A DNA stretch of 63,991 nucleotides, the filler included, from Octopus bimaculoides (lineage: Eukaryota), in NCBI RefSeq assembly GCF_001194135.2. It is 6 parts of 6 records of this genome, joined end to end, with 100 filler letters (N's around TTAATTAATTAA, not from the genome) between each part and the next. Parts side by side here need not be neighbours in the genome. Positions count along the whole stretch, not along the records: positions 44,952 to 62,012 come from NC_068996.1; 5 more parts are not named here. One strand, written 5' to 3'. Positions 44,952 to 62,012 of this stretch are shown here, in pieces. The position numbers and the translations under genes are program-made. Every line of letters starts with the position of its first letter. The first letter of the stretch is position 1. The notes below the pieces were generated by a model. It was given only the letters and a program-made list of their open reading frames with translations. It did no database searches and had not been told where the DNA came from.

Positions 44952-45260
44952 GTTGCCAGTGCCCCTGGGCTGGCTCTTGTGCGGGTGGCACATAAAAGAC
45001 ACCATTTTGTGCGTGGCCGTTGCCAGTACCGCCTGACTGGCCTTCGTAGGATTTTCAAGTGAGATCGTTGCCAGTGCCCCCTCTGGACTGGCTCTTGTGC
45101 GGGTGGCACATGAAAGACACCATTTTGAGCGTGGACGTTGCCAGTACCGCCTGACTGGCCTTCGTGCCAAATTAAATTGGAGCCTGGTGTTGCCATCCGG
45201 TTTCACCAGTCCTAAGTCAAATCGTCCAACCCATGCTAGCCTGGAAAGCGGACGTTAAAC

Positions 45261-45299
<39 letters not shown>

Positions 45300-45888
45300 A
45301 TATATGATGGGCTTCTTTCAGTTTCTGTCTACCAAATCCACTTTCCAAGGCTATTATAGAAGCCGCTTACCCAAGGTGCCATGCAGTGAGACTGAACCCA
45401 GAACCATGTTGTTGGTAAGCAAGCTACTTACCACACAGCCACTCCTGCGCCTGTATTTGCCAAACATCTTGCTGCAAATTACTGTAACTTTGATGAACAC
45501 TTCAAAGTACACATTCACAAAAGATATTCTGACTTCACTGCTTTTTATCTTGTTATCAGTTACACTTAAGTGTAAGTGTTCTACGTATTTTTCATTGTTT
45601 TTGTCATATTTTGAACCTGTAAAAAACAAACATACTAGTTTTTGTTATATTACACATCATGCTCTTCTAATTTTTTATCTACCTTCGTTTTCAAATTTCA
45701 TTCTGAGTTCAAATTCTGCTGAGGTCGACTTTGCATTTCATCCTTTAGGTGTTGATAAAATATATACTATTTGAGCATTGGGGTCAATATAATCAACTAA
45801 GCTCCTCTCCCAAAACTGCAGGCCATATGCCAAAATTTTAAACCAGTAGCAACAACGGATTAATGTTATCATTTTTTTTATCTTGCAG

Positions 45889-45958
45889 CAAATGAAGTCC
45901 TGTTTTCTGCAGCTGAAGTGCCTCGAGGATGACTGTAGCAACAGTGAAGAGACAAGAG
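45889..45958 (+). CDS. MIA3: TANGO1-like exon
   Basis: tcttgcag|CAAATG...ACAAGAG|gtaaaa; QMKSCFLQLKCLEDDCSNSEETR. Confidence 0.75.
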
Positions 45959-48900
45959 GTAAAAACCACCCTTCACATTCCATTTGATTCCTGTGTTATA
46001 TGCATATGGGCACACAGATAAGTAGATAGTAGAATGGATTGAGAGGTAGACACATACATGTGCATCAACACATACATACACACAGTCACATGTAGACAGA
46101 TGAATAGATTGCTGAATGAGTAAATTCTTCAATAAGAAGACATGTAAATAGGATACCACACACACACACACACACACACATCCACCCACACAGAAACAGA
46201 GTCAAGTATGGAGCTGGGCAGATATAGCATTACAAAATCTACCATCAAACATATAAAACAGACATTCTTATATGAACTGCATCATTCTATCCTTTAATCT
46301 TTTAACTTATAGTGTTGTATCATAATACAACACTTTACTGTCAAATCCAAATGTAGAACACATGCTTAATACTAATCTGTAGACTACTATCTCTGGACTT
46401 ACCTTAATTCCAAACTTGTTAATTGTTACCCCTTAACCTATAACCTGTAATCTTATTCCCTAACTAACCATTAAACCTCTTACCATAACCTCCACTTCTA
46501 ACTGTAATGATTTATCCTTATTACCATCTTAATCTTAATCCTCACCACTAATCCTTACTTTTACTCTTAACCTAAGTTACTCATCTTAATCTCTATCTGT
46601 AATCTTAATCCTTAAGCTTATTTTTTTCTCTAAATCTTTCTCTAAACCTTAATCTTAGTCTCTTACGCAAATGTAATTCTTAGCCTTAATAGATAAAACC
46701 AAAGTCTAGGAAAAGTCAGTAAAATTAATTTGTAAAACATACATACCATTCTAAAATCTCCCTACTTATACAAACTAATCTCAACTTGAAGACTTCACTG
46801 AAATTTAATCCATAGCTTTAATTATAATCTTAGTTTGTGATATTACTGTGTACTTTAACTTTAATCCTTAACTCTAATCTCTAACTTAATCACAAGGTTA
46901 GTCATTAATATAAAATGCCAAGTATAATTTTTCTTAACATGGTAACCAAAGATCTTAGCTCCCACAGTCATTTCTGCTTCTACTCTCATTCATACTTATG
47001 TTTCTAATCATAATCCCACCATAACCTTCCCAAACTATAATCACTAATCTTAATCTTTACCTAAATGCCTGATCCTTGCTGCAGTCTTAATCCTAATCTT
47101 TTACTTAATTCCTAACTCCAATCCCCACTTAATCTGCAATTTATACTTTAATGCTTACTTCAATCATATTCTTAATCTGGAATTCCTACATTCATCCCAG
47201 ACATTAATGTACATGATTTTAATCCCTTAACCTTAACAAACTTAACTTAAACCTTTAACCTAACCATAAATTTGAACATTCAAACTCTAATTGTATTGTT
47301 GTTTTCGTTGCTTTTGCTGCTGCTGTTTCATCATCATTCTCTTCCTTCTCCTCCTCATTATCCTTATTTTGTATAATTTCAGGTGATCACAATCTTGTGC
47401 AACAAAAGATACAACAAATGTTGGATGTTTCTGAGGTGAGTTATTCAGTTATTGTTATTTAACCCATTCCAGTTCAACATTGATTAAGTAAACACATTAC
47501 TACTCTGACCATCTTGTCATTTTATGAGTAGCTAGGAGTACATTTTGCAATGTGTAGTTCCTTAAGCTAGTTAGGTTTCTATTATTGTATGTCATCATCA
47601 TCATCATCATTTTGTATTGGCTTTTTTTTTCTTTTTTTTATCAGACTTGCATAGTTGGATGAATCTTCTTCTGCATAGTGTCTCACCACTTACTGCAGTC
47701 CTTTGTCATCTACTTGGTGAGATTTGGTGTCTTAAAATCAGCTTTCTTGGCTTCTTATGTCTTCCTCTTCCAAAGGTGCCTTCCACTGCATGACACTTCT
47801 TTCCCCAATTGTCATGCTCCATATGTATTACACAATCAAAGCAGCTCAGCTTTCACACACTACATCGATTCCTGTTCATCCAGTTTTTCTCTCTATACAT
47901 TTTTACTTTTTATTCATATGCATTAAGATTATACATCTAGAAGAGCATGTTCAGCTCATTTTTGCAGCTCACATACATCTTTTGCATTCAGTATTCATAA
48001 ATGTGAATACTGGATGAACAGGAATTGATGTAGTGTATGAAAGCTGAGCTGCTTTGATTGTGTAATACATATGGAGCATGAGAATTGGGGAAAGAAGTGT
48101 CATGCAGTGGAAGGTACCTTTGGAAGAGGAAGACATAAGAAGCCAAGAAAGCTGATTTTAAGACACCAAATCTCACCAAGTAGATGACAAAGGACTGCAG
48201 TAAGTGGTGAGACACTGCCCTTCACTTTTTCCACTCCCTTCTTTGTCTAGTTGCTGTACTTTCAGAAATCCCTAGTGTTGCTTAATTTGACTACTTATGT
48301 AGTAGAAGTTGTCAACTACTTTATGGAGACTTCTGAGTATGAACTTCCACAACATATCTGTTGTTTGCTATAGGACTGCATTACTGATTATATGACTGCT
48401 TTTTGCAATTTCTCTTTGCCAAATTAAGTATAATAAATGTTATTGGTATAAACTAAAACTTCTCCCCACAAGTACTTGTTTCATACATAATTTGTAGCCT
48501 TTAGACATTTCAGTAAATTTCACACATGTGCACACACACAAATACACACTCATGTGTAATTATTATTTTTAAAATTTACTACTTTTAACTACTTTGAGTT
48601 TTGTATCAGCAATGCATTCATTAGATGACACTTGAGAAATGCAAATGGAATTTATTATAATATTCCACAAGGCAACATACTGTAGACATCCACTTGGTCT
48701 TATTTCTTAAAATCCAGTAGAGTAATCAGATCTGCCTCCAATTACAGTTGACCAAGTAGAATTTGCTTACTTGATGACACTTTGACATCATTTCCCTTCT
48801 CTTTAAAGTATCAGTTTGTTTGGTCACATGATATTTCACTGTAATGCGCAATTGGCATTGCATTGTTCCATTCATATAGAGTATGCGGGAATAATTAATT

Positions 48901-50176
48901 ATTGATAAGAAAGAAAGTGTACTACAATCGGTACATGTGATTTTTATTGATAGAATGACGCTGCCAATGTATGATAATTGCATATGTATATAAATACATG
49001 TATATATACTTTCTAAAAAATGTGATGATGGGTGTATACACATGCCTACTTGTTTCTATCTCTGTTTCTTTCTCTTGCTCTGGCAGATGAATGCAATGTT
49101 AAAACAGTCCGATGATGAACGTGATCAGTTGAAACACCGGTTGGAGATTGAAGCTGAGAGCCGAGTAGAACTTGAAGGTGAGTATCATATTTTTGTGTAG
49201 CATATTTACTTGACTTGAGCTCATTTCAATTCCTTGCTCCACTCAGGTATATTATCCAGAGAGAGAGACTGAACTTTGAACTTTACATTGTCAAAGCAAA
49301 GAATTAAATCCTATAAAATCAAAAATAACTAAAACTACTAGCACATCCTCTACTTACATATAGCTTTTTGTGAATCGCTTAAAAACAATCTCATAACTTG
49401 AAGCTGACACACCTAAATATACACAACTGCTTACTAAGTTCATGCATGAATAAATTCTAAGCAATAACACAACCCTGAATTTTATTTATAAGAAGTTCTC
49501 CAAAATGTCTCTCCATCACAACCCACCCTATGACTTAATTACAACTCTATTCTAATCCACACACCCAAGAAACATTTTAACTCAACAAAGACTATATAAA
49601 GCCAAGGTTAACTTTAATGCATCACAGCCAGACAATGGCTTATCTGGCCAAAACTTCAAAGTCACTGTCAATAATATTCTTGTTTAAGAATAATAAAATT
49701 GTGCTCTACAAAAGTATGGAGTAACCTATCAGATTAATGTAAAATTGTTTCTCTAATAACTGAACATAAAAACCAACATTATATGTATGTATGTATATAT
49801 ATAGATGTGTGTGTGTGTGTGTGTGTGTATAATATATCTCATATCTAATATATAAAACAGAGATATGTGTGTATTCGCTTTTCACGTGAAAACGGTTTCA
49901 CCAATTGCTTCCATACTTGTGATGCATGAATAATTTGAATTCGGACATATAGTAGGGTCTTCATTTGGTTAATATATCATCATCATCATCATCATCATCA
50001 TACGTCCGCTTTCCATGCTAGCATGGGTTGGACGATTTGACTTTGACTGAGGACTGGTGAAACCAGATGGCTACACCAGGCTCCAATCTGATTTGGCAGA
50101 GTTTCTACAGCTGGATGCCCTTCCTAACGCCAACCACTCAGAGAGTGTAGTGGGTGCTTTTACGTGTCACCCGCAC

Positions 50177-50246
<70 letters not shown>

Positions 50247-51405
50247 CAAGGGAGAATGATGCAAAAAAAGTGAGGAAGTAAGAATCAAAATAACTTAGCT
50301 GCTCCTCACTTTTCAACATGCATAGCCAAGCCAACTTCAGGAAGCCACCCAGTTACCAGATAACCTATTAATCTGGCCGCCATGCTAGCCAGATTGACTA
50401 CATTCTCACCAGAAAGCGAGGTACATGGTTGCCATAAATGTAAAGACCTTCCCTGGTGAAGAATATACCCCTCAGCATAGGTTAGTCATTAGCGACTTCA
50501 GACTAGTCTGTAAAAGAAAGATTTGGAGTCTTAAGGATACTTTGAATAGTCAGAAATTTAGAGACGTCCTAATTGAAGCGTTTAACAAGAAGGAAGAGGA
50601 ATTACTGATGTGTAACCTTGAGGACAATGCGAAATTCCTACGGGACAACTTACTGAGTATCACAGACCAAATCTGTGGCTGGTGCAAAGTCCCATCCACA
50701 CCTAGGTGGTTGGGACAGTGTCTAAACAGGGCCGCTAGAGTGAAGAAACAGTCCTGGAAAGACTGGAAGAATGGTGGTAGCAGAGAGCTATATCAGATAG
50801 CTAGAAGGCAGGTATACTTAGGCAGGGGAGAAGCAGAAACGAAGGACTTTGCCAATGTTCTGCAGCATGAGGATCAGAGGCTTGAGGTGTTTCAGACTGC
50901 AAGACAGTAGGTGAAAATCAATTTGTTGTAGAAGTGCATTCACATGGATGATGGCTCACTTGCAGTTAGTGATTCTACAAAGAAAGAGGCTTGGAAATAC
51001 CATTATGAAAGACTGCTAAATGTTGAGAATGCTTGGGAAAAGGAGAGCCTGCCTAATCTGGACCCAACAGAGGGGCTGTTATTTGAATTGACAGTAGCTT
51101 AATAAATAAAGCAATTAAGGATATGAAGACATGGAAAGCTTCCATCCCACCAGGAATCACTGCAAAGTTTGTCATGTGTTTCAAAGTCTCAATTTTTGAT
51201 TAAAAAATTAACATAGGGCATGAATTAAGCATTCCCTTTTCATTCATTTGACATTAAGCAACATATTCCCATCCACATTGTTCCAGGTTCAGTCTCATTG
51301 TACGGTATATTGGGAAAGTGTCTTCTGCTACAGCCTTGGGCCAACCAAAGCCTTGTGAGTGGATTTAGTAGATGGAAACTGAAAGAAGCCTGTGGAACAC
51401 GCATG

Positions 51406-51441
<36 letters not shown>

Positions 51442-53897
51442 TCTTTTGTCTGTGTTTGTCCCCAACTACCACTTGACAACCAGTTGGTGTGTTTACATCT
51501 CCATAATCTAGCAGTTCAGCAAAAGAGACTGATACAATAAGAACTAGGTTTTAAAAAATAGAAAGAAATACTGGGATTGATTTCTTTGACTAAAATTCTT
51601 CAAGGCAGTGTGCCCCAGCATGACCCAAAGTCTAACAAGTAAAAACTTGTTTCTAACAGAAACAAGTATAAGAATATATCTCCTCATTCTTCTCACCTTT
51701 TTTACTTCACACTCATTCCCACTCCCACCTCTATTTCCATGCTTTGCTCATATACAGTTAATGACTAGACACACACACATTCCACACCTCCACTAACCCA
51801 TGCTACTTTACTTCTATATTTGCATGCCTCTGCATATGTATACCTCACACACTACAAAACCTCATGCACAGTACTCACCCACTTTATGCCTATCTCAAAA
51901 CACAAACAAATTAACTGTATATGCATGCACATACTTTTCCTCTCTTCTTTCCTCCTTTCCCAAAGAACCATAGAACTGCATTCTCTTCTGGCCTTTATCC
52001 CCAGGCCTGCCTTCCCCCACTCTTCTCAACCACTTTTCCTCTTTTGCACTCTTCTATTATTTTTTCTTTATACTTTCCTTCTGATGAAGATTTAGCATCT
52101 AAAATGTTGAGAGTCCTTTTCTTCTTTAAGCCTTAAACTAATACAATATTTATTAAAACTTATCCCTCCTGTGTTGTCTTTTTCTTTTCTTTTTTTTTTT
52201 CTTGTCTGTTGTCTTCAATTTACATATATTTTCATTAAAACCAAGACTGTGTGTTTGTCTTGTAACTTGAATTTCACTTTTACACACACATACACACACA
52301 CACACAATGTTCACACATTTTGTTTTTGCATTTCAGATAAAATTGCTACGTTAGAGCGTGACATTGAAACCATTCAAGCAGACAAAGCAAAAGTTGTTCG
52401 TCAGAACCATGAGCTCACAGTATTGACTTCATATCTGAAAGAGAAAGAGCTTCAATTTCAAAGGTGGGTTTGTGGTGTGTGTACTGATTTGTAAGCATTT
52501 GTAGACTTCATTTCAATCTGAACTATACCCAACACATTCTAGTATGATGACAACCAAACATTGTCTTCTTTGATATAGAGGCCTCTTACCCTATATCAGT
52601 AATACATTTATAAAATCCTGACTACAGTCTCTATAATCACTATAAAATCCAGGCTACAGGTTTTATTCGAACTTTGCTCTAAAAGTCTGTTGAATTGATT
52701 CTTTCCACTTGTCATTCTTGTCACCTAGATTTCAATAACTTCCAATATATATACACACACACACACTCTACCCATTCTGGCAGTCTATCCCCTGCCCCCT
52801 CATTCTCTTTCCTTACAATTTTTCAAACTGATTTTCTAACTCACCTAGGAACCTCATCTCCATTATCTCTTGCAGCTCCTACTGTTCATTTTCTCTTTTT
52901 CTCCCCTTCCAATACTGGATGTGAGAAATTGCTCTGCCCCACCCTCCCTTAGTTCAGAACCTTGTCTACTAGCATGAAGCAGGCCCTGCACCCCCAGAGC
53001 TGCATGGTAACCTCAATAGTGTAGGTGGCATGAAAAAATTACCTAGCTCATGCTGTAGATTGGTTGGCATAAGGAAGGGCATTCAGTTATAGCAACCATG
53101 CCAAAGCAGACATGTTAGTTCGATGCAGTTCTTGAACATAGATTCTGTCAAACCATCCAGTCCATGCCAGTATGGAACATGTTTTGTAATTGATGATGAT
53201 GATGATAATAATATACATACAGTTTCTACCTACCAAATTACTGAATTCTCTCATTTGGATTAGTTGATCCTGGGCTGTACTAGAGTGCATTTACCCACAG
53301 TGTAATGTTGTGGGACTGGACCTGAAGTACACAAGCATCTGCATAAATATGTCAAGAGATATACGTAGTCACATTAACACCAAGCAACATTCAGTCATGC
53401 AGCAACATTTGTAATACATAAAAATGTAAGGTAAATAAAAGTATATCACAAATCGTCCTTAATGGTATAGAGCAGAAATTATGCTTGATTTATATGCATA
53501 ATTTGATATGTACAGACAAATTGATAAAACTCATTCAATTTATAATAACAACAATATATTCTGTATCAAGAAACATCTCTCTATATATATATATATAAAT
53601 ATATTCCAGAGCTTTGGGTGAACAGGAAGTCCTCAAAAACCAGAACATTACCAAATTAGGAAGTGCTGAGGAACGAGTCAAGACAATTGAGGATGAACTA
53701 AGTAATTACATGTAAGTGAACCACATGACATGCTTGTTGAGAGGTCAACCTTCATATTTTTCTTGTTTCTTTTTCTTTTTTTTATATCAATTTTACATAT
53801 TTATTATATGATTAATATTTTCATTGTTAATGTTATTAGAACTCGAGTGCCCTCTTTTATACATACAGAGTTTATATATTACTGCATGATTATAAAC

Positions 53898-53938
<41 letters not shown>

Positions 53939-56900
53939 TAGCAGTACCCATGGAATTTCCAGTTATTTTGAAAATTGTATGATGAAATTGTATATTTCTC
54001 TGATTCTTGGGAAGATATAAAATTCCATGTAGGCAGTATTGAAAAGTCAATTAATCAGTCTGTGAACAAACAAACAAGCAGAATTGTAATATATATATCA
54101 TCCATTTTATATTTTTTTTCTATGATTGCATGCATCATACAGAATTTGTTGAGGCAGCTGGAGGCTTTCTGTCACCAATTCTCACCTGTTTCCAAGCAAG
54201 GTAATACCTCCTGATGACCAGACATGTTTTCACATAATATTGTAAACATAGGACATTGCTTGCCCTATGGTGACACTTGTTTACAATTATCACACAGTTA
54301 TAAAAAAAAGGAGACAGTAACACAGTCATGCAGACACCCACCCACACACACATGTACATATACATCTATGTATGACAAGCTTCTTTCAGTTTCCATCTCT
54401 CAAATTCATTCAAAATACTTTAATCAGGCTAGGACTATAGTAAAAAAATACTTACCTAAGGTGTCACACAGTGGGACTGAACCCCAAACTACATGGTTGG
54501 GAAGTAGCTTCTTACCACATTCACACCCGTGGCTATGGTTTATATATATAGGCCCAGGTATGGCTGTGTGGTAAGAAACTTGTTTCTCAACTGCATAGTT
54601 TAGGTTCAGTCCCACTGTGTAACACCTTGGGCAAATATCTTTACTATATAGCCAAAGCCTTTTGAGTGAACTTGGGAGATGGGAACTGAAAGTAGCCTAT
54701 CGTGTATGTGTGCATGTGCATGTATGATAGTGTGTGTATGTGTGTGATGGGGTATGTGTGTATTTCTGTTTCTTGCCTTGACATTATATGATAATTGTAA
54801 ATTAATGTCAATGGAATGCAAGTGGTGTCCTTCATTTCCAATATTTTGTGAAAATATGTTTGGTGATAGGAAAATTATTATTTTATTTGGAAACAGGTGA
54901 AGATTAGTGACAGGGAGGACATCTGGTTGTAGAAAATCTACTTCAACGTATTCCATCCAACTCATGTAAACATAAAAAAGTGAACTTTAAAACAATGATA
55001 TATATATATATATATATATACAGGCAGAGTCGTGGCTATGTAAGGTGCTTGCTTCCCAGTCACATGGTTCCAAGTTCAGTCCCACTGCATGGCACTTTGG
55101 GCAAGTGTCTTCTACCATAGCCTTGGGCCAACTAAAGTCTTGTGAGTGAATTCGGTAGAAAGAAAGTGAAAAGAAGCCTGTCATGTATGTGTGTGTGTGT
55201 GTCTTTGTACCAACACCACCACTTGACAACCAGTATTGGCATGTTTACATTCCTGTAACTTAGCGATTTGGCAAAAGTGTCCAATAAAATAAATACCAGG
55301 CTTTAAAAAATAAATCCTGGGGTTGATTTGTTTGGCTTTTAAGGTGGTGCCCCAGCTTGGCTGCAGTCAACTGACTGAAACAAGTAAAAGAAGCTTGCTT
55401 CCCAACCACATGGTTCCGGGTTCAGTCCCACAGCATGGCACCTTAGACAAGTGTCTTCTACTATCGCCTTGGGCCAACCAAAGCCTTGTGAGTGGAGTTG
55501 ATAGACAGAAACTGAAAGAAGCCCATCATATATACATATATATATGCACATATAAATACATACATACTATGAGAATATTAAATAGGAATACAGTCTAAAA
55601 GAAAATGGTGGGTGGAAATATTGATGGGAATCAGTCTCTGAGAGATAAAAAAAAAAACATACTTAGAACTAGAGAATAATGCTTCAGGATTTTTTCCTTA
55701 ATACAATACTATATGTATATAAATTCTGAAACAATGCTTTGGGCCTCAAACAAGTTATGAATGAGAAATGGATTGCAATGGTAAAATATCAAGTGAATTG
55801 TTTATTATATATCTAAGAAAGAAAGAAAGCAATCAGTATGACTTAGCTTTGTTGATATTCATAGATCCTAGTTAAGAGGTCAATGAAAATAACACATCAG
55901 GATTCTTTTTTACTCGTTATAATAAAGCACTTAAATACATACATACATTCTAAAAGAAAGACTACATTATTGGCCCTAAACAGATTATGAATGAGAAAGT
56001 GAGCTGCAGTATGTATGTGTATATATTTTATATATATATGTATGTATATGTATTAATATGTGTAAGTGTAAAGCATTGAAAAAAAAAACTTTTTATAAAC
56101 CCATGTTTCAACACAAATTTGCATTGATTACTTGAAAGACAAATGATCCATCTATGCATCCATCTTCTCTGCTCATTTATTCATAGCAGGGGTTAGAGTC
56201 CTCAGGCACCTCTTCTGAAGGGTCTCGTCACAAGCAATTATGAAAAGTAATGAAGAAATACTAAATCAAGCTAATCTTCAAATCAATCTATTAAATTTAC
56301 TACAAATTCTTTAAAAAAAAAGAACATAAATATATTTATATTTATATGTGCAGGAGTAGCTTGCTTACCAACCACACGGTTCTGGGTTCAGTACCACTGT
56401 GTGGCACCTTGGGCAAGTGTCTTCTACTATAGCCTCAGGTCGACCAAAGCCTTGTGAGTGGATTTAGTAGACGATGTATATGTGTGTGTCTGTGTTTGTC
56501 CCCACCAACATCGCTTGACAACCAATGCTGGTGTGTTTACGTCCCCGTAAATTAGCGGTTCGGCAAAAGTGACCGATAGAATAAGTACTAGACTTGCAAA
56601 AAATAAGTCCTGCGGTTGATTTGCTCAACTAAACATGGCCGCAGTCAAATAACTGAAAAGAATAAAAGAAAAAAGACAGGTTATGAATATTTAACAAGAA
56701 CAATAGTATCTTGTATTCTGTATAACATGCCAACACCTGCACTAATTGAAAACAAAAAAGCAGAATTAAAACCCAGAGGCATTGGTCACCTTTTTCTTAC
56801 CTAGTACAAAGCTACTCCTCGTTTGTCAAGGGGTCTTTGCTTCTATACAAGGTAAAGGCATTGCACATGCATGTGCACACATATATATAAAGTGTGTATG

Positions 56901-59159
56901 TGCATATATATTCATACTGGCTATTTTTTTACGAGTATAGGACAAAAGCCGAAAAGCTTAGTCATTCAAACGTACTTCTTATCGTTTTTATGTTTCTACA
57001 CATTTCTTGAAGTAAATGCTTTCCTTTTTGTTAGAATTCAGACAATATGTACATCGAGTAGTAAAGAGTTTTGTATTCTGTTATTCTATTACTGATGGTA
57101 AGGTTGATTTATTTTCGTTTTCAAACTTAAAAAATTATTCTAAAAACGAGAAAAATAATTAAAACACACGGAACATGCCATTGTGAGGGACATAGATGTT
57201 TTGACACCGTTTTTCGATTGAATACATTTTGTTTACTTAAAAATTAGAATTTTGGAAACTAATTTTTTTTTACACCACGATTTTCGTTTTTGTTTATGTG
57301 AAATTATAAANNNNNNNNNNNNNNNNNNNNNNNNNNNNNNNNNNNNNNNNNNNNNNNNNNNNNNNNNNNNNNNNNNNNNNNNNNNNNNNNNNNNNNNNNN
57401 NNNNNNNNNNNNNNNNNNNNNNNNNNNNNNNNNNNNNNNNNNNNNNNNNNNNNNNNNNNNNNNNNNNNNNNNNNNNNNNNNNNNNNNNNNNNNNNNNNNN
57501 NNNNNNNNNNNNNNNNNNNNNNNNNNNNNNNNNNNNNNNNNNNNNNNNNNNNNNNNNNNNNNNNNNNNNNNNNNNNNNNNNNNNNNNNNNNNNNNNNNNN
57601 NNNNNNNNNNNATATAGAGGGACCTTCTGGGCTTAACGTTGAAAATAATCTAAAAAAAAATTCTGGGGTCGATATAATCGACTAAAAATTCCTCAAGTTG
57701 GTGCCGTAGCATGGTCGCAATCTAATGACTGCAACAAATAAAAAGAAACAAAAAACAAAATATATCACAGAAGTGGTTTTGATCAGGCTTTAAAAAATTC
57801 TGGGTTCCATACAGCCATCGAAGTATTCTTCAAGGCGGTACCCAAGCATTGCCGGCAGCAGTGTAATAACAGCAACAAGTAAAAAAAAAAAAAAAATTCT
57901 GGGGTCGATACATTCAACTAGAAATTCTAAAAACAGAAAAATAACCGAAAAATATAACCATGAGGCTTTTTTCCGGATCCCAGATCATCAGGTTACCTAA
58001 TATCCGGTACAAAACCAATTGATGAGACTGGTTATACTTTGATTAATATATATGTATTATTATCATTTAACATGTTTTCGATGATAATGTAATAGTATGA
58101 TGCTGATGATGACTATATATATACATGTATGTATACACACTCTGCGCACACATACACATGCATATACATAAGTGCAGTTTATGAAGATAAATATATAAAA
58201 TTCACTATAAAATAGGTCATTGTGAACTAAATTAAAATCTTAACTGAAAAATATTATTGCAAAAGAAGGTTTCTCTTCATCAATATAAATAAAATTAGGT
58301 CTAGTGGAAGCAAAATGGAAGCAGTGAAGTATCAATCTAGACGGGTTTTCTTTGAAACAAAATAACTATTTCAGCTCAGTTTCCAATGATTTGGATAACT
58401 TTTCAATGTGGTTATAAATACATTCAATACAAATCAACAGACATGCAGTGCGTAACTAGCACGTCTTGACTGCACACCACTGGAAGAAAAACATATAAAA
58501 CTCACTATAAAATAGGTCATTGTGAACTGCATTACTAATATCTTAACTGAAAAATATATTAAAGCAAAAAAAGGTTTCTTTTTATCAATATAAATAAAAT
58601 TAGGTCATGAAAAACTATTTAGTACAGTCCATTATCATTCTACCCAAAGACATTTTAATGTCTGTTTCCTTATTGGCATAGATTGTTAATATCTGTTGTA
58701 ACATTATGTAGATCAAATGATTACTAAAAAAATATTTCCTTTAATAATCTGCTGTATTTACACATCCACCAGGCATCATCCAGACACTTGATGATCTTAA
58801 TCTATTGGATGATTATTTAATGTTGAAAAGTGCCCAGGCTAGATAAATTCTTTTTTTTTTTAAATGGGAAGAAAACAGAAAATTTATTGTCAAATGATAC
58901 CTTATTCACCTGAACTTTGGTAATTTTTGATTGAAACTACTTTTCTTAAGATAACTAATGTATGTCTTTGCAAGAAAAATCTTAACATTTTACTTCATAC
59001 TTAAAATTATGTATTCCCTAAATCTTTGCATTAGAAACTCAAAACTTCTTTGCAAGTAAAATATGTGGTTCACATGAATGATGAAATATGATACAACAAA
59101 TTGTTCATCATGAAGCAACAAAATTTATTTTTACTTAGTCCAAAAGTTCATGTTTACAA

Positions 59160-59978: not shown

Positions 59979-61219
59979 TCCTTAGTTTTTCTCAACCTTT
60001 ATTGACCTGCGACTATAGTTTAAACTGCCAACTGACAATATTCATGCAGTTGGACTGAACCTCTAACCACTGCATGGCAACTTGGGTACGTATCTTCTTT
60101 GATAACCCCAAGCCAACTAGAGTCTTGTGAGTGAATTTGATAAATAGAAACTGAAAGAAGTCCATCATACACACACATATATGTATGTAATTGTGTGTGC
60201 ATGTTTGTGTTTCCTTGTCTTGACATGGTGTAATAATTGCGAATGAGTGTTACTATCATTCAAGCAGCATTACTTCTTTCTAGTATTCTGCAAAAAAAGC
60301 CATCTCTAGCCTTGCTTAGGAAAAGGTGAAGGTAGATGACAGGAAGGGCATCCAGCTGTAGACAATATGCCTCACTAAACTTCATCTGACCCATAAAACA
60401 AATAAAGGGATAAAAATATTGATGTTACATTTATTGTCCAGTTACAGTCATTTCAGTAACAGGAGTAGGGTAAGTAAATCATTCAACATGCTGGAACCCA
60501 TAGAAACAATGGTTATTTAACTGTATGCCCGTGTGTGTGTGTGCTCAACCTATGCTGGTGTGGAAAATGGATGTTAAATAATAATGATGATGATGATATA
60601 TGTATGATGCATGCATATACATACATATAGAGAAATCACACTCATATATGCATTTACAATTATATTTGTTTTTCATTGCAGACAACAAAATGAAGATTTG
60701 AAACGAGAAATCCTCAAAGCTGAGCGAGATTTTCGTGCACAGGTGACGCTTGATATATACATATATGTGGGTGTGTATGAATGCATGTGTGTGTGTATAC
60801 ATGTGCTAATACATATGAAGACGCATAACAGATAAATATTTATATATCATGTTCCACTCTCCAAAATGTATATAAAAGATTTGAGATTGTTTCAATTTTA
60901 TCAAAATTTCTGTAGCATTTTGAAATAATATTGTTAAACCAATTTTGTTTCCTTAAAAATACAAAGTCATACAAATATATTCCTACATTGTTAAATGCCA
61001 ACAACAAATACATAAAACATATAGATTGCGAAAAATAAATGGCACATAAAATATAGATACATAGAAGAAGCAAGGAATTGGAATGTTTTCTATGTTCTAA
61101 GATCAAAATCTGCCAAATTGCAATTGGTGGACTATGGTTGATAATCATTATTATTATGGTTATGTTATTTTCTTTCTTTGCAGATTGCAGCAAATGAAAA
61201 GAAAGCTCATGAGAATTGG
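45889..61219 (+). CDS. MIA3: TANGO1/cTAGE5 (MIA3/MIA2) family ER-exit-site protein, cytoplasmic coiled-coil region; partial
   Basis: Seven phase-compatible exons (45889-45958, 47383-47435, 49087-49177, 52337-52463, 53610-53711, 60682-60742, 61184-61219). They include QKIQQMLDVS and end in [22 protein letters not shown], matching remembered human TANGO1 NQIKQMMDVS and [23 protein letters not shown]. Confidence 0.9.
46400..47290. repeat. Degenerate hexamer-like array (CTTAAT/CCTAAT/CCTAAC), very G-poor on +
   Basis: Recurring CTTAAT, CTAATC and TTAACC words over about 900 bp. Confidence 0.7.
47383..47435 (+). CDS. MIA3: TANGO1-like exon
   Basis: tttcag|GTGATCAC...TCTGAG|gtgagt; GDHNLVQQKIQQMLDVSE. 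Confidence 0.88.
47677..48216. repeat. Long inverted repeat: 208-bp arms, 124-bp spacer
   Basis: 47677-47884 is the reverse complement of 48009-48216; I count 4 mismatches. Confidence 0.95.
49087..49177 (+). CDS. MIA3: TANGO1-like exon
   Basis: tggcag|ATGAAT...CTTGAAG|gtgagt; MNAMLKQSDDERDQLKHRLEIEAESRVELE. Confidence 0.88.
50330..51170 (+). mobile_element. Decayed RTE LINE ORF2 fragment (endonuclease end to RT start)
   Basis: SQIDYIL, VKTFPGEE..PQHRLVISDF, WKYHYERLLNVEN.WEKESLP, KAIKDMK; stops and indels. Confidence 0.88.
52337..52463 (+). CDS. MIA3: TANGO1-like exon
   Basis: tttcag|ATAAAATT...TTTCAAAG|gtgggt; DKIATLERDIETIQADKAKVVRQNHELTVLTSYLKEKELQFQR. Confidence 0.88.
53610..53711 (+). 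CDS. MIA3: TANGO1-like exon
   Basis: ttccag|AGCTTTG...TACAT|gtaagt; ALGEQEVLKNQNITKLGSAEERVKTIEDELSNY. Confidence 0.88.
60682..60742 (+). CDS. MIA3: TANGO1-like exon
   Basis: ttgcag|ACAACAA...GCACAG|gtgacg; [20 protein letters not shown]. Confidence 0.88.
61184..61219 (+). CDS. MIA3: TANGO1-like exon (36 nt)
   Basis: tctttgcag|ATTGCA...AATTGG|gtaatg; [12 protein letters not shown]. Confidence 0.92.
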
Positions 61220-61810: not shown

Positions 61811-61821
61811 TTTATTATTAT

Positions 61822-62012
61822 TGACAGGTGCGAAAATTAACGCGGAAAAGTCAATGGGCTTGCAACTAGGCACCTGGAGGGGCAAGTCCATGCCGTCCAA
61901 CAGCGTCGTAGGGCGCTGGACAGAAGGACCCATTAAACTGCTCGGGGTCTGGTTCGGTCCGGACCTCCAGTTGGAGAAAAACTGGGAAGAAGTGACGAAC
62001 AGGGTGGCCAAC
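61822..62012 (+). mobile_element. L1/Tx1-clade LINE RT C-terminal fragment
   Basis: TGAKINAEKSMGLQLGTWR...PIKLLGVWFG...NWEEV, uninterrupted; cut by the linker. Confidence 0.75.

What the first reader, a model, noticed from the sequence alone, without database searches (positions are those of the whole stretch)
47677..48216. Near-perfect 208-bp foldback built from an RTE LINE 3' coding fragment inside a TANGO1 intron
Seen: the arms 47677-47884 and 48009-48216 are reverse complements with about 4 mismatches around a 124-nt spacer, starting about 240 nt after the exon ending at 47435. The arm is an old, stop-riddled RTE C-terminus (HMEHENWGKKC..VEGTFGRGR..K..), yet the arms are about 98% identical, so the inversion or homogenisation is much younger than the insertion. 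Established: long intronic dsRNA is the typical ADAR substrate, and coleoid cephalopods edit heavily. Inference: the pre-mRNA forms a long hairpin that could be hyper-edited, yield endo-siRNAs against RTE, or affect splicing of nearby exons.
Basis: partly seen in the sequence, partly recalled or inferred. Interest (0 to 1): 0.7.

Follow-up and report, generated by a model that had tools for sequence, protein, structure and literature searches.

The report
Inverted LINE-fragment repeat in an intron
A decayed piece of a jumping gene (a LINE retrotransposon) sits in an intron next to a recent back-to-front copy of itself, so the transcript should fold into a 211-base-pair RNA hairpin; such hairpins are very common in octopus genomes, so this is an ordinary example.

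Summary
Arms 47677-47887 and 48006-48216 are reverse complements: 211 nt, 5 mismatches, no indels, 118-nt spacer. It is the only long near-perfect inverted repeat in the 17-kb piece, and the predicted RNA fold is -421 kcal/mol (z = -48).

The core of each arm is a decayed C-terminal tail of a retrotransposon reverse-transcriptase ORF. This was shown against real LINE tails fetched from metagenomes. The RTE clade could not be tested.

The foldback lies in a 1651-nt intron of a plus-strand coiled-coil gene (five in-phase AG/GT exons). TANGO1 identity could not be verified.

Only the left copy runs on outward to an A-rich stretch and an (ATG)n tail. The right arm is therefore an inverted copy of an internal segment, not a second retrotransposition. 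No target-site duplication was found. There is 4-nt microhomology (ACTG/CAGT) and a 13-nt hairpin at the inner junction. I favour a DNA-level template switch about 2.4% divergence ago.

Function is inference only: a probable ADAR hyper-editing substrate, most likely a neutral by-product. Octopus genomes are known to be rich in such structures, so interest is low.

The parts
47677..47887 (-). Left arm of the foldback. LINE sense is on the minus strand, so it is antisense to the host gene. Probable source copy.
   Evidence: 211 nt, 5 mismatches to the right arm. The LINE-tail profile hits 47861-47706 on the minus strand, i-E 1.3e-5. Frameshift-aware alignment scores 61 against a null of 30 +/- 3.5.
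47888..48005 (.). 118-nt AT-rich spacer (30% GC), the loop of the hairpin. Origin unresolved.
   Evidence: It weakly resembles the inner half of the left arm in direct orientation: p 0.002-0.04 depending on the null. No significant LINE-protein similarity in either orientation.
48006..48216 (+). Right arm, an inverted copy of the left arm (LINE sense on the plus strand). It lacks the LINE 3' end and tail.
   Evidence: Profile hit at 48035-48172 on the plus strand, i-E 1.6e-5. The sequence beyond 48216 is unrelated to the sequence beyond 47677.
47611..47676 (-). Stretch present only beyond the left arm. On the LINE sense strand it reads the presumed end of the ORF (..IHPTMQV**), then an A-rich run, then GCCAATACAAA. 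Probable LINE 3' terminal region.
   Evidence: Sequence read. T-rich repeat at 47621-47639. Similarity to SINE tails and to reference 3' ends is suggestive but not significant.
47593..47610 (-). (CAT)6 on the plus strand, which is an (ATG)n retroposon-type tail on the LINE sense strand, 66 nt beyond the left arm.
   Evidence: There are only three perfect (ATG)>=5 runs in the 17 kb. The other two are tails of SINE-like elements in the matching orientation.
47985..48016 (+). Small hairpin at the inner junction of the right arm: CATTCAGTATTCA / loop TAAATG / TGAATACTGGATG, 12 of 13 paired. It contains ACTG (48009-48012), which is complementary to CAGT (47881-47884) and is repeated at 48214-48217.
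   Evidence: one of only two such non-low-complexity hairpins in 17 kb; single-stranded DNA fold -9.4 kcal/mol, z = -3. Microhomology read directly.
47436..49086 (+). Host intron (1651 nt) that contains the foldback. The 5' splice site is GAG|GTGAGT and the 3' splice site is ..CTGGCAG|ATG.
47383..47435 (+). Upstream exon of the host coiled-coil gene.
   Evidence: AG/GT bounded and in phase with exons 45889-45958, 49087-49177, 52337-52463 and 60682-60742, giving a 134-codon open spliced frame.
49087..49177 (+). Downstream exon of the host gene.

Best explanation
A 5'-truncated, decayed 3' end of a LINE (non-LTR retrotransposon) lies antisense in an intron of a coiled-coil protein gene. This is the left copy: arm, then about 66 nt of 3' terminal sequence, then an (ATG)n tail. 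Later, a 204-211-nt internal segment of this fragment was copied in inverted orientation 118 nt away. I think this happened by a DNA-level template switch: the nascent strand folded back during replication or repair, entered and left at 4-nt microhomology (ACTG/CAGT), and was helped by a small local hairpin. The two arms have since diverged by 2.4%. The result is most likely a selectively neutral structural by-product. Both arms are transcribed in one pre-mRNA, so the intron should form a 211-bp duplex (101 bp perfect; 3 true mismatches and 2 G.U pairs). That is the standard substrate for promiscuous ADAR hyper-editing before the intron is degraded. Shown: the repeat, its LINE-tail origin, the intronic position, the asymmetry of the flanks, and the lack of a target-site duplication (TSD). 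Inferred: the direction and mechanism of copying, transcription, folding in vivo, and editing.
For: - Repeat geometry and identity.
- Fold.
- LINE-tail homology. 120 metagenome contigs carry '..RLRWYGHVLRKEDNDWVKKCMEYEVEGARPRGRPKKTW..DRSRWRKQI..*'. A profile of 13 of these tails hits only the two arms in the six-frame translation of the piece (shuffled pieces reach at most 3.9 bits against 14.1). The part upstream of the motif used for selection still ranks first, scoring 44 against a shuffled best of 34 +/- 3.7. The same tail follows a Pfam RVT_1 domain in L082.
- Only the left copy continues into an A-rich stretch and an (ATG)n tail in the right orientation. This is the kind of tail carried by the SINE-like elements of this piece. 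It also fits the octopus RTE described in PMC9115989, where a microsatellite starts at the ORF end.
- The right arm ends without any tail, so it is not an independent retrotransposition.
- No direct repeat of 7 nt or more flanks the structure.
- Junction hairpin and ACTG/CAGT microhomology.
- Template switching is a documented way to create hairpins in one step (PMC8794818, PMC10710096, PMC10766183).
- Editing context: PMC9989829 and PMC5625713. The latter reports more than 1 million hyper-edited sites in Octopus bimaculoides and an exceptionally high fraction of loci that form long near-perfect dsRNA.
Against: - The copied tract (204-211 nt) is several times longer than typical short template-switch events. 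The largest pattern in PMC8794818 was 59 bp.
- Four nucleotides of microhomology is weak evidence, and the direction of copying is not proven.
- LINE homology of the 47611-47676 stretch and of the spacer is not statistically significant.
- The LINE-tail profile score depends strongly on the GRGR.KK motif; with the motif masked the score is 1.6 bits.
- No other genome, reads, RNA-seq or small-RNA data could be reached. The ancestral state, expression and editing are therefore all untested.
- If the source LINE RNA was already decayed, the insertion and the inversion could be a single recent event.
Confidence: 0.62

Rival explanations
1. The foldback was made in one step during retrotransposition. 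Either the first-strand cDNA snapped back on itself and the reverse transcriptase copied it, or a twin-priming event had a very large overlap. The source would be an already decayed (non-autonomous) LINE transcript. In that case the 2.4% divergence dates the insertion itself.
For: - The topology fits: inverted arm, spacer, sense arm, LINE 3' end, (ATG)n tail.
- ACTG/CAGT microhomology could serve as a self-priming site.
- Twin-priming variants with unusual architecture are documented for L1 (PMC2837659).
Against: - No TSD of 7 nt or more flanks 47593-48216. A TSD only 2.4% old should still be visible.
- In classical twin priming the inverted segment comes from further 5' in the RNA and overlaps the direct segment only slightly. 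Here the whole inverted segment duplicates the direct one.
- The spacer shows no significant LINE homology contiguous with either arm.
Confidence: 0.2
2. The 540-bp unit is one copy of a mobile foldback or MITE-like family whose long terminal inverted repeats were captured from a LINE tail. It arrived here by transposition.
For: Long, near-identical terminal inverted repeats with sharp ends. The genome could not be searched, so copy number is unknown.
Against: - No TSD of any length directly abuts the arms..TGCAT| against |GCCCT.
- There is no other copy in the 17-kb piece.
- The left arm appears to continue outward into a LINE 3' end and tail, which an inserted unit should not do.
Confidence: 0.08
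3. The hairpin is a functional RNA locus kept by selection. It could be an hpRNA or endo-siRNA source against its LINE family, a precursor of a young miRNA, or a regulator of splicing of the neighbouring exons.
For: A very stable 211-bp stem within a transcribed intron, 241 nt from a 5' splice site. Template switching is known to give birth to miRNA hairpins (PMC10710096).
Against: - No Rfam family matches.
- Nothing suggests conservation. The 5 mismatches are ordinary neutral changes, one at a CpG site.
- The stem is far longer than a miRNA precursor.
- Structures like this are very numerous in octopus (PMC5625713), so the prior for function at any one locus is low.
Confidence: 0.05
4. Assembly or library artefact, such as a chimeric palindromic read or a mis-join. 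The real genome has a single arm.
For: The piece comes from a scaffolded draft with a 301-N gap at 57311-57611. Inverted repeats are a known source of assembly trouble.
Against: - The arms differ at 5 sites, including a CpG transition. They enclose a unique, non-palindromic 118-nt spacer and have different unique flanks.
- Artefactual palindromes are usually exact and lack a spacer.
Confidence: 0.04
5. Two independent head-to-head insertions of the same LINE family, later homogenised by gene conversion.
For: LINE fragments and SINEs are dense in this region.
Against: - Both ends of the two arms coincide to the nucleotide.
- The right arm has no 3' end or tail, which every target-primed insertion must carry.
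Confidence: 0.02

Closest known systems
Intronic inverted-repeat transposable-element pairs that form dsRNA and are hyper-edited by ADAR (for example inverted Alu pairs in primates, and repeat-derived dsRNA across Metazoa including Octopus bimaculoides)
   Same: Two copies of a retroelement sequence lie in opposite orientation within one transcription unit, are close together and nearly identical, and are predicted to form a long intramolecular duplex (PMC9989829, PMC5625713).
   Different: The two arms are not two separate insertions. They are a local inverted duplication of one internal LINE segment. Editing itself was not observed.
Template-switch mutations and replication-based inverted duplications (Loytynoja and Goldman four-point model; ODIRA; quasi-palindrome template switching)
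   Same: An inverted copy of adjacent sequence was inserted nearby. There is short microhomology at the switch points and a small hairpin at the junction. A perfect stem is created in one step (PMC8794818, PMC10710096, PMC10766183).
   Different: The copied tract is 204-211 nt, against the usual tens of nt for short template switches. It is far smaller than ODIRA-type amplicons. The ancestral state is not available.
Twin-priming 5'-inverted LINE insertions
   Same: The order is inverted LINE segment, junction, sense LINE segment with 3' end and tail (PMC2837659).
   Different: The inverted segment duplicates the sense segment completely instead of continuing it 5'-ward. A 118-nt spacer of unclear origin lies between them. 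No TSD was found.
LINE ORF C-terminal tail family '..RLRW[YF]GHV..W.KKC..VEG.R.RGRPKKTW..DR..WR..' from marine host-associated metagenome contigs (L001-L120)
   Same: The arm core aligns collinearly with this tail: KLSCFDCVIHMEHDNWGKKC--HAVEGTFGRGRHKKP against RLRWYGHVLRKEDNDWVKKCMEYEVEGARPRGRPKKTW.
   Different: The arm is decayed, with stops, at least 2 frameshifts and small deletions. Its clade (RTE or another) is undetermined. The metagenome relatives have a PHD finger after the RT domain and a roughly 90-nt 3' UTR ending in (TG)n or (GTT)n, whereas the tail here is (ATG)n.

Membership tests
LINE (non-LTR retrotransposon) ORF C-terminal tail fragment | Sequence homology to the conserved tail downstream of the RT domain | tested here: met
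   The profile of 13 metagenome LINE tails hits only the two arms in the piece (i-E about 1e-5; shuffled maximum 3.9 bits against 14.1). Frameshift-aware alignment scores 61 against 30 +/- 3.5. The motif-independent part ranks first in the piece.
LINE (non-LTR retrotransposon) ORF C-terminal tail fragment | In intact relatives the tail belongs to an ORF with a reverse-transcriptase domain | tested here: met
   The L082 ORF directly upstream of such a tail has Pfam RVT_1 (E 1.1e-9) and PHD (7.3e-8). It overlaps the L120 tail ORF at '..SSMLHGSETWP..'.
LINE (non-LTR retrotransposon) ORF C-terminal tail fragment | A retroposed copy keeps the element's 3' end and tail | tested here: met
   Met for the left copy only: an A-rich run and (ATG)6 lie 66 nt beyond the arm, in the right orientation. 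The right arm has none.
LINE (non-LTR retrotransposon) ORF C-terminal tail fragment | Target-site duplication flanking the insertion | tested here: not met
   There is no direct repeat of 7 nt or more between 47540-47690 and 48195-48300. This is expected if the insertion is old.
RTE clade of LINEs | Placement of the RT domain within the RTE clade by phylogeny | not testable with these tools
   The window has no RT domain of this element and no RTE reference sequences were reachable. Protein searches returned nothing useful.
RTE clade of LINEs | Very short 3' UTR ending in a microsatellite rather than poly(A) | tested here: inconclusive
   On the left copy about 45 nt separate the presumed stop (TGATAA) from (ATG)6. 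This fits the octopus RTE-2_OV description (PMC9115989). Microsatellite tails also occur in other LINE clades, and the reading frame is inferred.
ADAR hyper-editing substrate (long intramolecular dsRNA) | Near-perfect duplex of about 100 bp or more formed within one RNA | tested here: met
   211-bp stem with a 101-bp perfect run, -421 kcal/mol, z = -48.
ADAR hyper-editing substrate (long intramolecular dsRNA) | Both arms lie in one transcription unit | tested here: met
   Both arms are inside one intron of a plus-strand gene model with five in-phase AG/GT exons. Expression itself was not tested.
ADAR hyper-editing substrate (long intramolecular dsRNA) | Clusters of A-to-G mismatches in RNA reads | not testable with these tools
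   No RNA-seq access.
Foldback / MITE-type DNA transposon | Terminal inverted repeats directly flanked by a TSD, and multiple genomic copies | tested here: not met
   No TSD abuts the arms. There is no further copy in the piece. Genome-wide copy number could not be tested.
Template-switch (replication-based) inverted duplication | An inverted copy of nearby sequence with microhomology at the switch points | tested here: met
   CAGT at 47881-47884 against ACTG at 48009-48012, with ACTG repeated at 48214-48217. A junction hairpin is present. Four nucleotides is weak evidence.
Template-switch (replication-based) inverted duplication | An ancestral or allelic state that lacks the inverted copy | not testable with these tools
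   No related genome was reachable.
Twin-priming LINE insertion | The inverted 5' segment continues the element upstream of the direct segment, and a TSD flanks the whole | tested here: not met
   The inverted segment duplicates the direct one completely. No TSD was found.
TANGO1 / MIA3 / cTAGE5 gene | Significant sequence homology of the exons to family members | tested here: inconclusive
   No database homologue. PDB and Pfam gave only generic coiled-coil matches below threshold. That is a lead, not a test.
hpRNA / endo-siRNA or miRNA locus | Small RNAs processed from the stem, and conservation of the structure | not testable with these tools
   No small-RNA or comparative data. No Rfam match.

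The most novel reading that the evidence does not exclude
A single template-switch event turned a dead LINE fragment into a 211-bp intronic hairpin that now works as a heritable RNAi trigger. It would act as an hpRNA / endo-siRNA source, or as a hyper-edited dsRNA sponge, against its own still-active LINE family in a cephalopod. This would be an instance of de novo birth of a transposon-defence locus.
Probability: 0.04. Interest if true: 0.55.

Novelty: new member of a known kind. Interest (0 to 1): 0.12.

Why it matters
Taken alone it matters little. Nearby inverted copies of young repeats are the main source of endogenous dsRNA and of ADAR hyper-editing in animals, and octopus is already known to have an exceptionally high density of them (PMC5625713, PMC9989829). 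There are two modest points of interest. First, the two arms are a local inverted duplication of one internal LINE segment rather than two insertions. The junction microhomology and small hairpin make it a fairly clean, unusually long (about 205 nt) candidate for replication template switching creating a long RNA hairpin in one step. Second, if the host gene is well expressed, the locus would be a convenient natural test substrate for intronic hyper-editing in cephalopods.

Tried and rejected
Searches that gave nothing:
- The search for homologous proteins with the antisense 82-aa ORF of the arm, with a stitched sense translation of the arm, and with the 134-aa spliced exon peptide.
- The search of protein representatives with the 48-aa arm core. 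The only hit was a spurious 921-aa repetitive protein.
- Pfam on the arm peptide and on two other retroelement-like ORFs of the piece.
- Rfam on the whole piece.
- The look-up of encoding contigs for three window ORFs. I could not reach an independent assembly or an orthologue.
- The search for related loci in viral contigs, and exact 26-mer scans of genome and viral contigs.
- k-mers from the arm in the O. vulgaris transcriptome supplement, and peptide motifs in the literature.

Ideas tested and not supported:
- The outer 66 nt of the left copy is homologous to the SINE tails of the piece: not significant (p 0.12-0.49).
- LINE homology extends into the spacer or beyond the arms: not significant.
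- The spacer is a diverged tandem copy of the inner half of the left arm: only suggestive (p 0.002-0.04 depending on the null). Left as unexplained.

Ideas considered and rejected:
- The 55-86-aa ORFs inside the foldback are genes. They are mirror images produced by the palindrome and have no homologues.
- Two independent insertions. See the rival explanations.
Full report
**1. The observation**

The repeat finder lists arms 47677-47887 and 48006-48216: 211 nt, 98% complementary, 118 nt apart. It is the top inverted repeat of the piece. All others are 70-93% SINE pairs.

Pairing position by position gives five mismatches and no indels:
- 47778/48115 and 47867/48026 are G.T.
- 47811/48082 is G-G.
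- 47856/48037 is C-A.
- 47885/48008 is T-T.

Complementarity collapses immediately outside both ends. The outer 101 bp are perfect. One difference is a CpG (left) against CpA (right), which is a typical germ-line change. A 36-mer of the arm occurs twice in the window against zero expected.

As RNA, 47640-48260 folds at -421 kcal/mol against -155 +/- 5.6 for shuffles, z = -48. In the plus-strand transcript two of the mismatches are G.U pairs. A unique non-palindromic spacer, different unique flanks and five ordinary substitutions argue against a chimeric-read palindrome. The piece is a scaffolded draft (301 N at 57311-57611), and I had no reads to check.

**2. What the arms are**

Direct database routes failed. 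I therefore scanned metagenome contigs for DNA encoding RGRPKKTW, a motif I remembered from LINE tails. The 120 contigs returned, mostly from marine host-associated metagenomes, carry a recurrent tail: '..ELRERLGLDDIISVLQQNRLRWYGHVLRKEDNDWVKKCMEYEVEGARPRGRPKKTWREIVEKDCQARKLNREDAMDRSRWRKQIRDD*'.

- A profile of 13 of these tails, searched against the six-frame translation of the whole 17-kb piece, hits only the two arms: 47861-47706 minus and 48035-48172 plus, i-E 1.3e-5 and 1.6e-5. Shuffled pieces reach at most 3.9 bits against 14.1.
- A frameshift-aware alignment scores 61 against 30 +/- 3.5.
- The references were selected by the motif, so I checked the rest separately. With the motif masked the HMMER score falls to 1.6 bits. 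The 31 residues upstream of the motif still put the two arms first among 1647 tiles, scoring 44 against 32 for the next unrelated tile and 34 +/- 3.7 for the shuffled best.
- In contig L082 the ORF that runs into such a tail has Pfam RVT_1 (1.1e-9) followed by a PHD finger.

The arm core is therefore a decayed C-terminal tail of a non-LTR-type reverse-transcriptase ORF. It has a 48-codon open core bounded by stops, small deletions relative to the references, and frameshifts needed on both sides. 'LINE 3' coding fragment' is supported. 'RTE' could not be tested, because no RT domain of this element is in the window and no RTE references were reachable.

**3. Context**

Five AG/GT-bounded segments on the plus strand splice in phase into a 134-codon open frame that is rich in heptad-like coiled-coil sequence. 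They are 45889-45958, 47383-47435, 49087-49177, 52337-52463 and 60682-60742.

The foldback lies in the 1651-nt intron 47436-49086. It is 241 nt from the 5' splice site and 870 nt from the 3' splice site.

The protein found no homologue in the large collection. PDB and Pfam gave only sub-threshold generic coiled-coil matches. That is a lead, not a test, so TANGO1 stays unverified.

**4. Anatomy beyond the arms**

The two copies are not equivalent. On the LINE sense (minus) strand the left arm continues with '..KW*DT MQKKIHPTMQV**', then an A-rich run, then GCCAATACAAA and (ATG)6 at 47610-47593.

The piece holds only three perfect (ATG)>=5 runs. The other two are the tails of SINE-like elements in the matching orientation. 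(ATG)n is therefore the retroposon tail of this genome. By my rough estimate, the chance of finding one within 100 nt on the correct side and strand is about 0.01.

The SINE tail '..GGACGTTAAACG(ATG)n' resembles the 3' terminus of the metagenome LINE family, '..GCCGTTAAACGG(GTT/TG)n'. The similarity of the left copy's last 66 nt to these tails is visible, but it is not significant on its own.

The right arm stops at 48216 and is followed by unrelated sequence with no tail. Every target-primed insertion carries the 3' end, so the right arm is a copy of an internal segment and not a second insertion. No direct repeat of 7 nt or more flanks the structure, and no short repeat abuts the arms. This argues against a cut-and-paste foldback element and against a recent one-step retrotransposition.

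**5. Junctions**

The first bases of the right arm, together with the last two of the spacer (48004-48016, TGAATACTGGATG), pair 12 of 13 with 47985-47997 across a 6-nt loop. Only two such non-low-complexity hairpins exist in the 17 kb. As single-stranded DNA it folds at -9.4 kcal/mol, z = -3.

ACTG at 48009-48012 is complementary to CAGT at 47881-47884, the inner end of the left arm. The same ACTG recurs at 48214-48217 across the outer junction. The structure can thus be written as the insertion of a roughly 204-nt inverted copy of 47677-47880 at '..AATACTG^', with 4-nt microhomology at entry and exit.

The T-T mismatch at 47885/48008 is then explained, because 48006-48012 would be pre-existing sequence rather than copied sequence. 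This is the footprint expected of a template switch during replication or repair (PMC8794818, PMC10710096, PMC10766183). The tract is much longer than typical short template switches, and four nucleotides is weak evidence.

A reverse-transcriptase snap-back or an overlapping twin-priming event at the time of insertion would give the same topology (PMC2837659). It is my main rival. The missing TSD counts against it.

The spacer weakly resembles the inner half of the left arm in direct orientation (p 0.002-0.04 depending on the null). I leave this unexplained.

**6. Age**

Five differences in 211 nt is 2.4%, or about 1.2% per arm. With no cephalopod mutation rate in hand I give only an order of magnitude: a few million years at 1-3e-9 per site per year. 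This is inference.

**7. What it does**

Nothing locus-specific could be tested. From established knowledge, ADARs edit long, nearly perfect duplexes promiscuously. Across Metazoa most editing sites lie in young repeats paired with a nearby inverted copy (PMC9989829). Octopus bimaculoides shows more than a million hyper-edited sites and an exceptionally high fraction of loci that can form long near-perfect dsRNA (PMC5625713).

My rough estimates, all conditional on the host gene being expressed:

| Outcome | Probability |
|---|---|
| The intron folds into the 211-bp stem | about 0.8 |
| It is hyper-edited | about 0.6 |
| It yields functional small RNAs | 0.1 or less |
| It affects splicing | 0.1 or less |

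No Rfam family matches. The ORFs of 55-86 aa inside the foldback are mirror images created by the palindrome and have no homologues. The most likely status is a neutral by-product.

From my own knowledge, long inverted repeats with spacers of 100 nt or more are far more stable in DNA than unspaced palindromes (Lobachev et al. 2000). That fits its persistence.

**8. Verdict**

LINE-tail origin, intronic position and young arms hold. RTE, TANGO1 and every functional statement are untested.
- It is a new member of a very well-known and, in octopus, very abundant kind.
- The only mildly unusual aspect is the origin by local inverted duplication of about 205 nt with junction microhomology.
- Interest is low.

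Noticed in passing
window 45165-45281 and 49976-50098: An inverted pair of SINE-like elements, 91-93% complementary over about 117 nt and 4.7 kb apart (I7/I11). Each ends in an (ATG)n tail (45262-45297 plus; 49978-50001 minus). They bracket exons 45889-45958, 47383-47435 and 49087-49177 as well as the foldback. This gives a second, long-range dsRNA possibility, and it is the arrangement known to favour back-splicing.
   Followed up: partly
window 51255-51560, 55042-55330, 55388-55570, 56354-56625, 60067-60220 (plus); 45299-45470, 54331-54504 (inverted): At least seven copies of another SINE-like family, 65-87% alike (families D5, D7, D10, D14, D15, D18). They give many further inverted pairs (I2-I6, I8, I10, I12-I15, I18, I19, I23), including a close pair at 54426-54483 / 54603-54660 that is 79% complementary and 119 nt apart. 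ARAGORN finds no tRNA-like head.
   Followed up: partly
window 45222-45261 versus loci L015, L063, L120 (3' ends): The SINE-like tail '..GGACGTTAAACG' just before (ATG)n resembles the terminus '..GCCGT(T/A)AAACGG' just before the (GTT)n or (TG)n microsatellite of the metagenome LINE family whose ORF tail matches the arms. This would fit a shared SINE/LINE 3' end. Significance was not tested.
   Followed up: no
window 57311-57611: A run of 301 N, which is a scaffolding gap. The source is therefore a draft assembly.
   Followed up: yes
window 46370-47290: About 900 nt of the upstream intron is a degenerate satellite-like stretch built on ATCTTA / TTAACTTTAATCC-type units. TRF detects only short pieces of it.
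   Followed up: partly
window 50425-51102 (plus) and 61821-62012 (plus, cut by the end of the piece): There are open frames of 161 and 52 aa, and a frame that runs off the end of the piece ('..KLLGVWFGPDLQLEKNWEEV..'). They look like other retroelement fragments. They have no Pfam hit at E<=1 and no record in the contig index.
   Followed up: partly
loci L082 (1154-2081 plus), L042, L066, L112: In the metagenome LINE relatives a PHD finger follows the RT domain. Several contigs carry two tails, in tandem or nested, so this part of the element is often rearranged.
   Followed up: no
protein P0001: The only hit of the 1.84-billion-protein search was a 921-aa protein made of about 15 degenerate repeats, probably a translated satellite. 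It matched the arm peptide in 15 stretches and is spurious for this question.
   Followed up: partly
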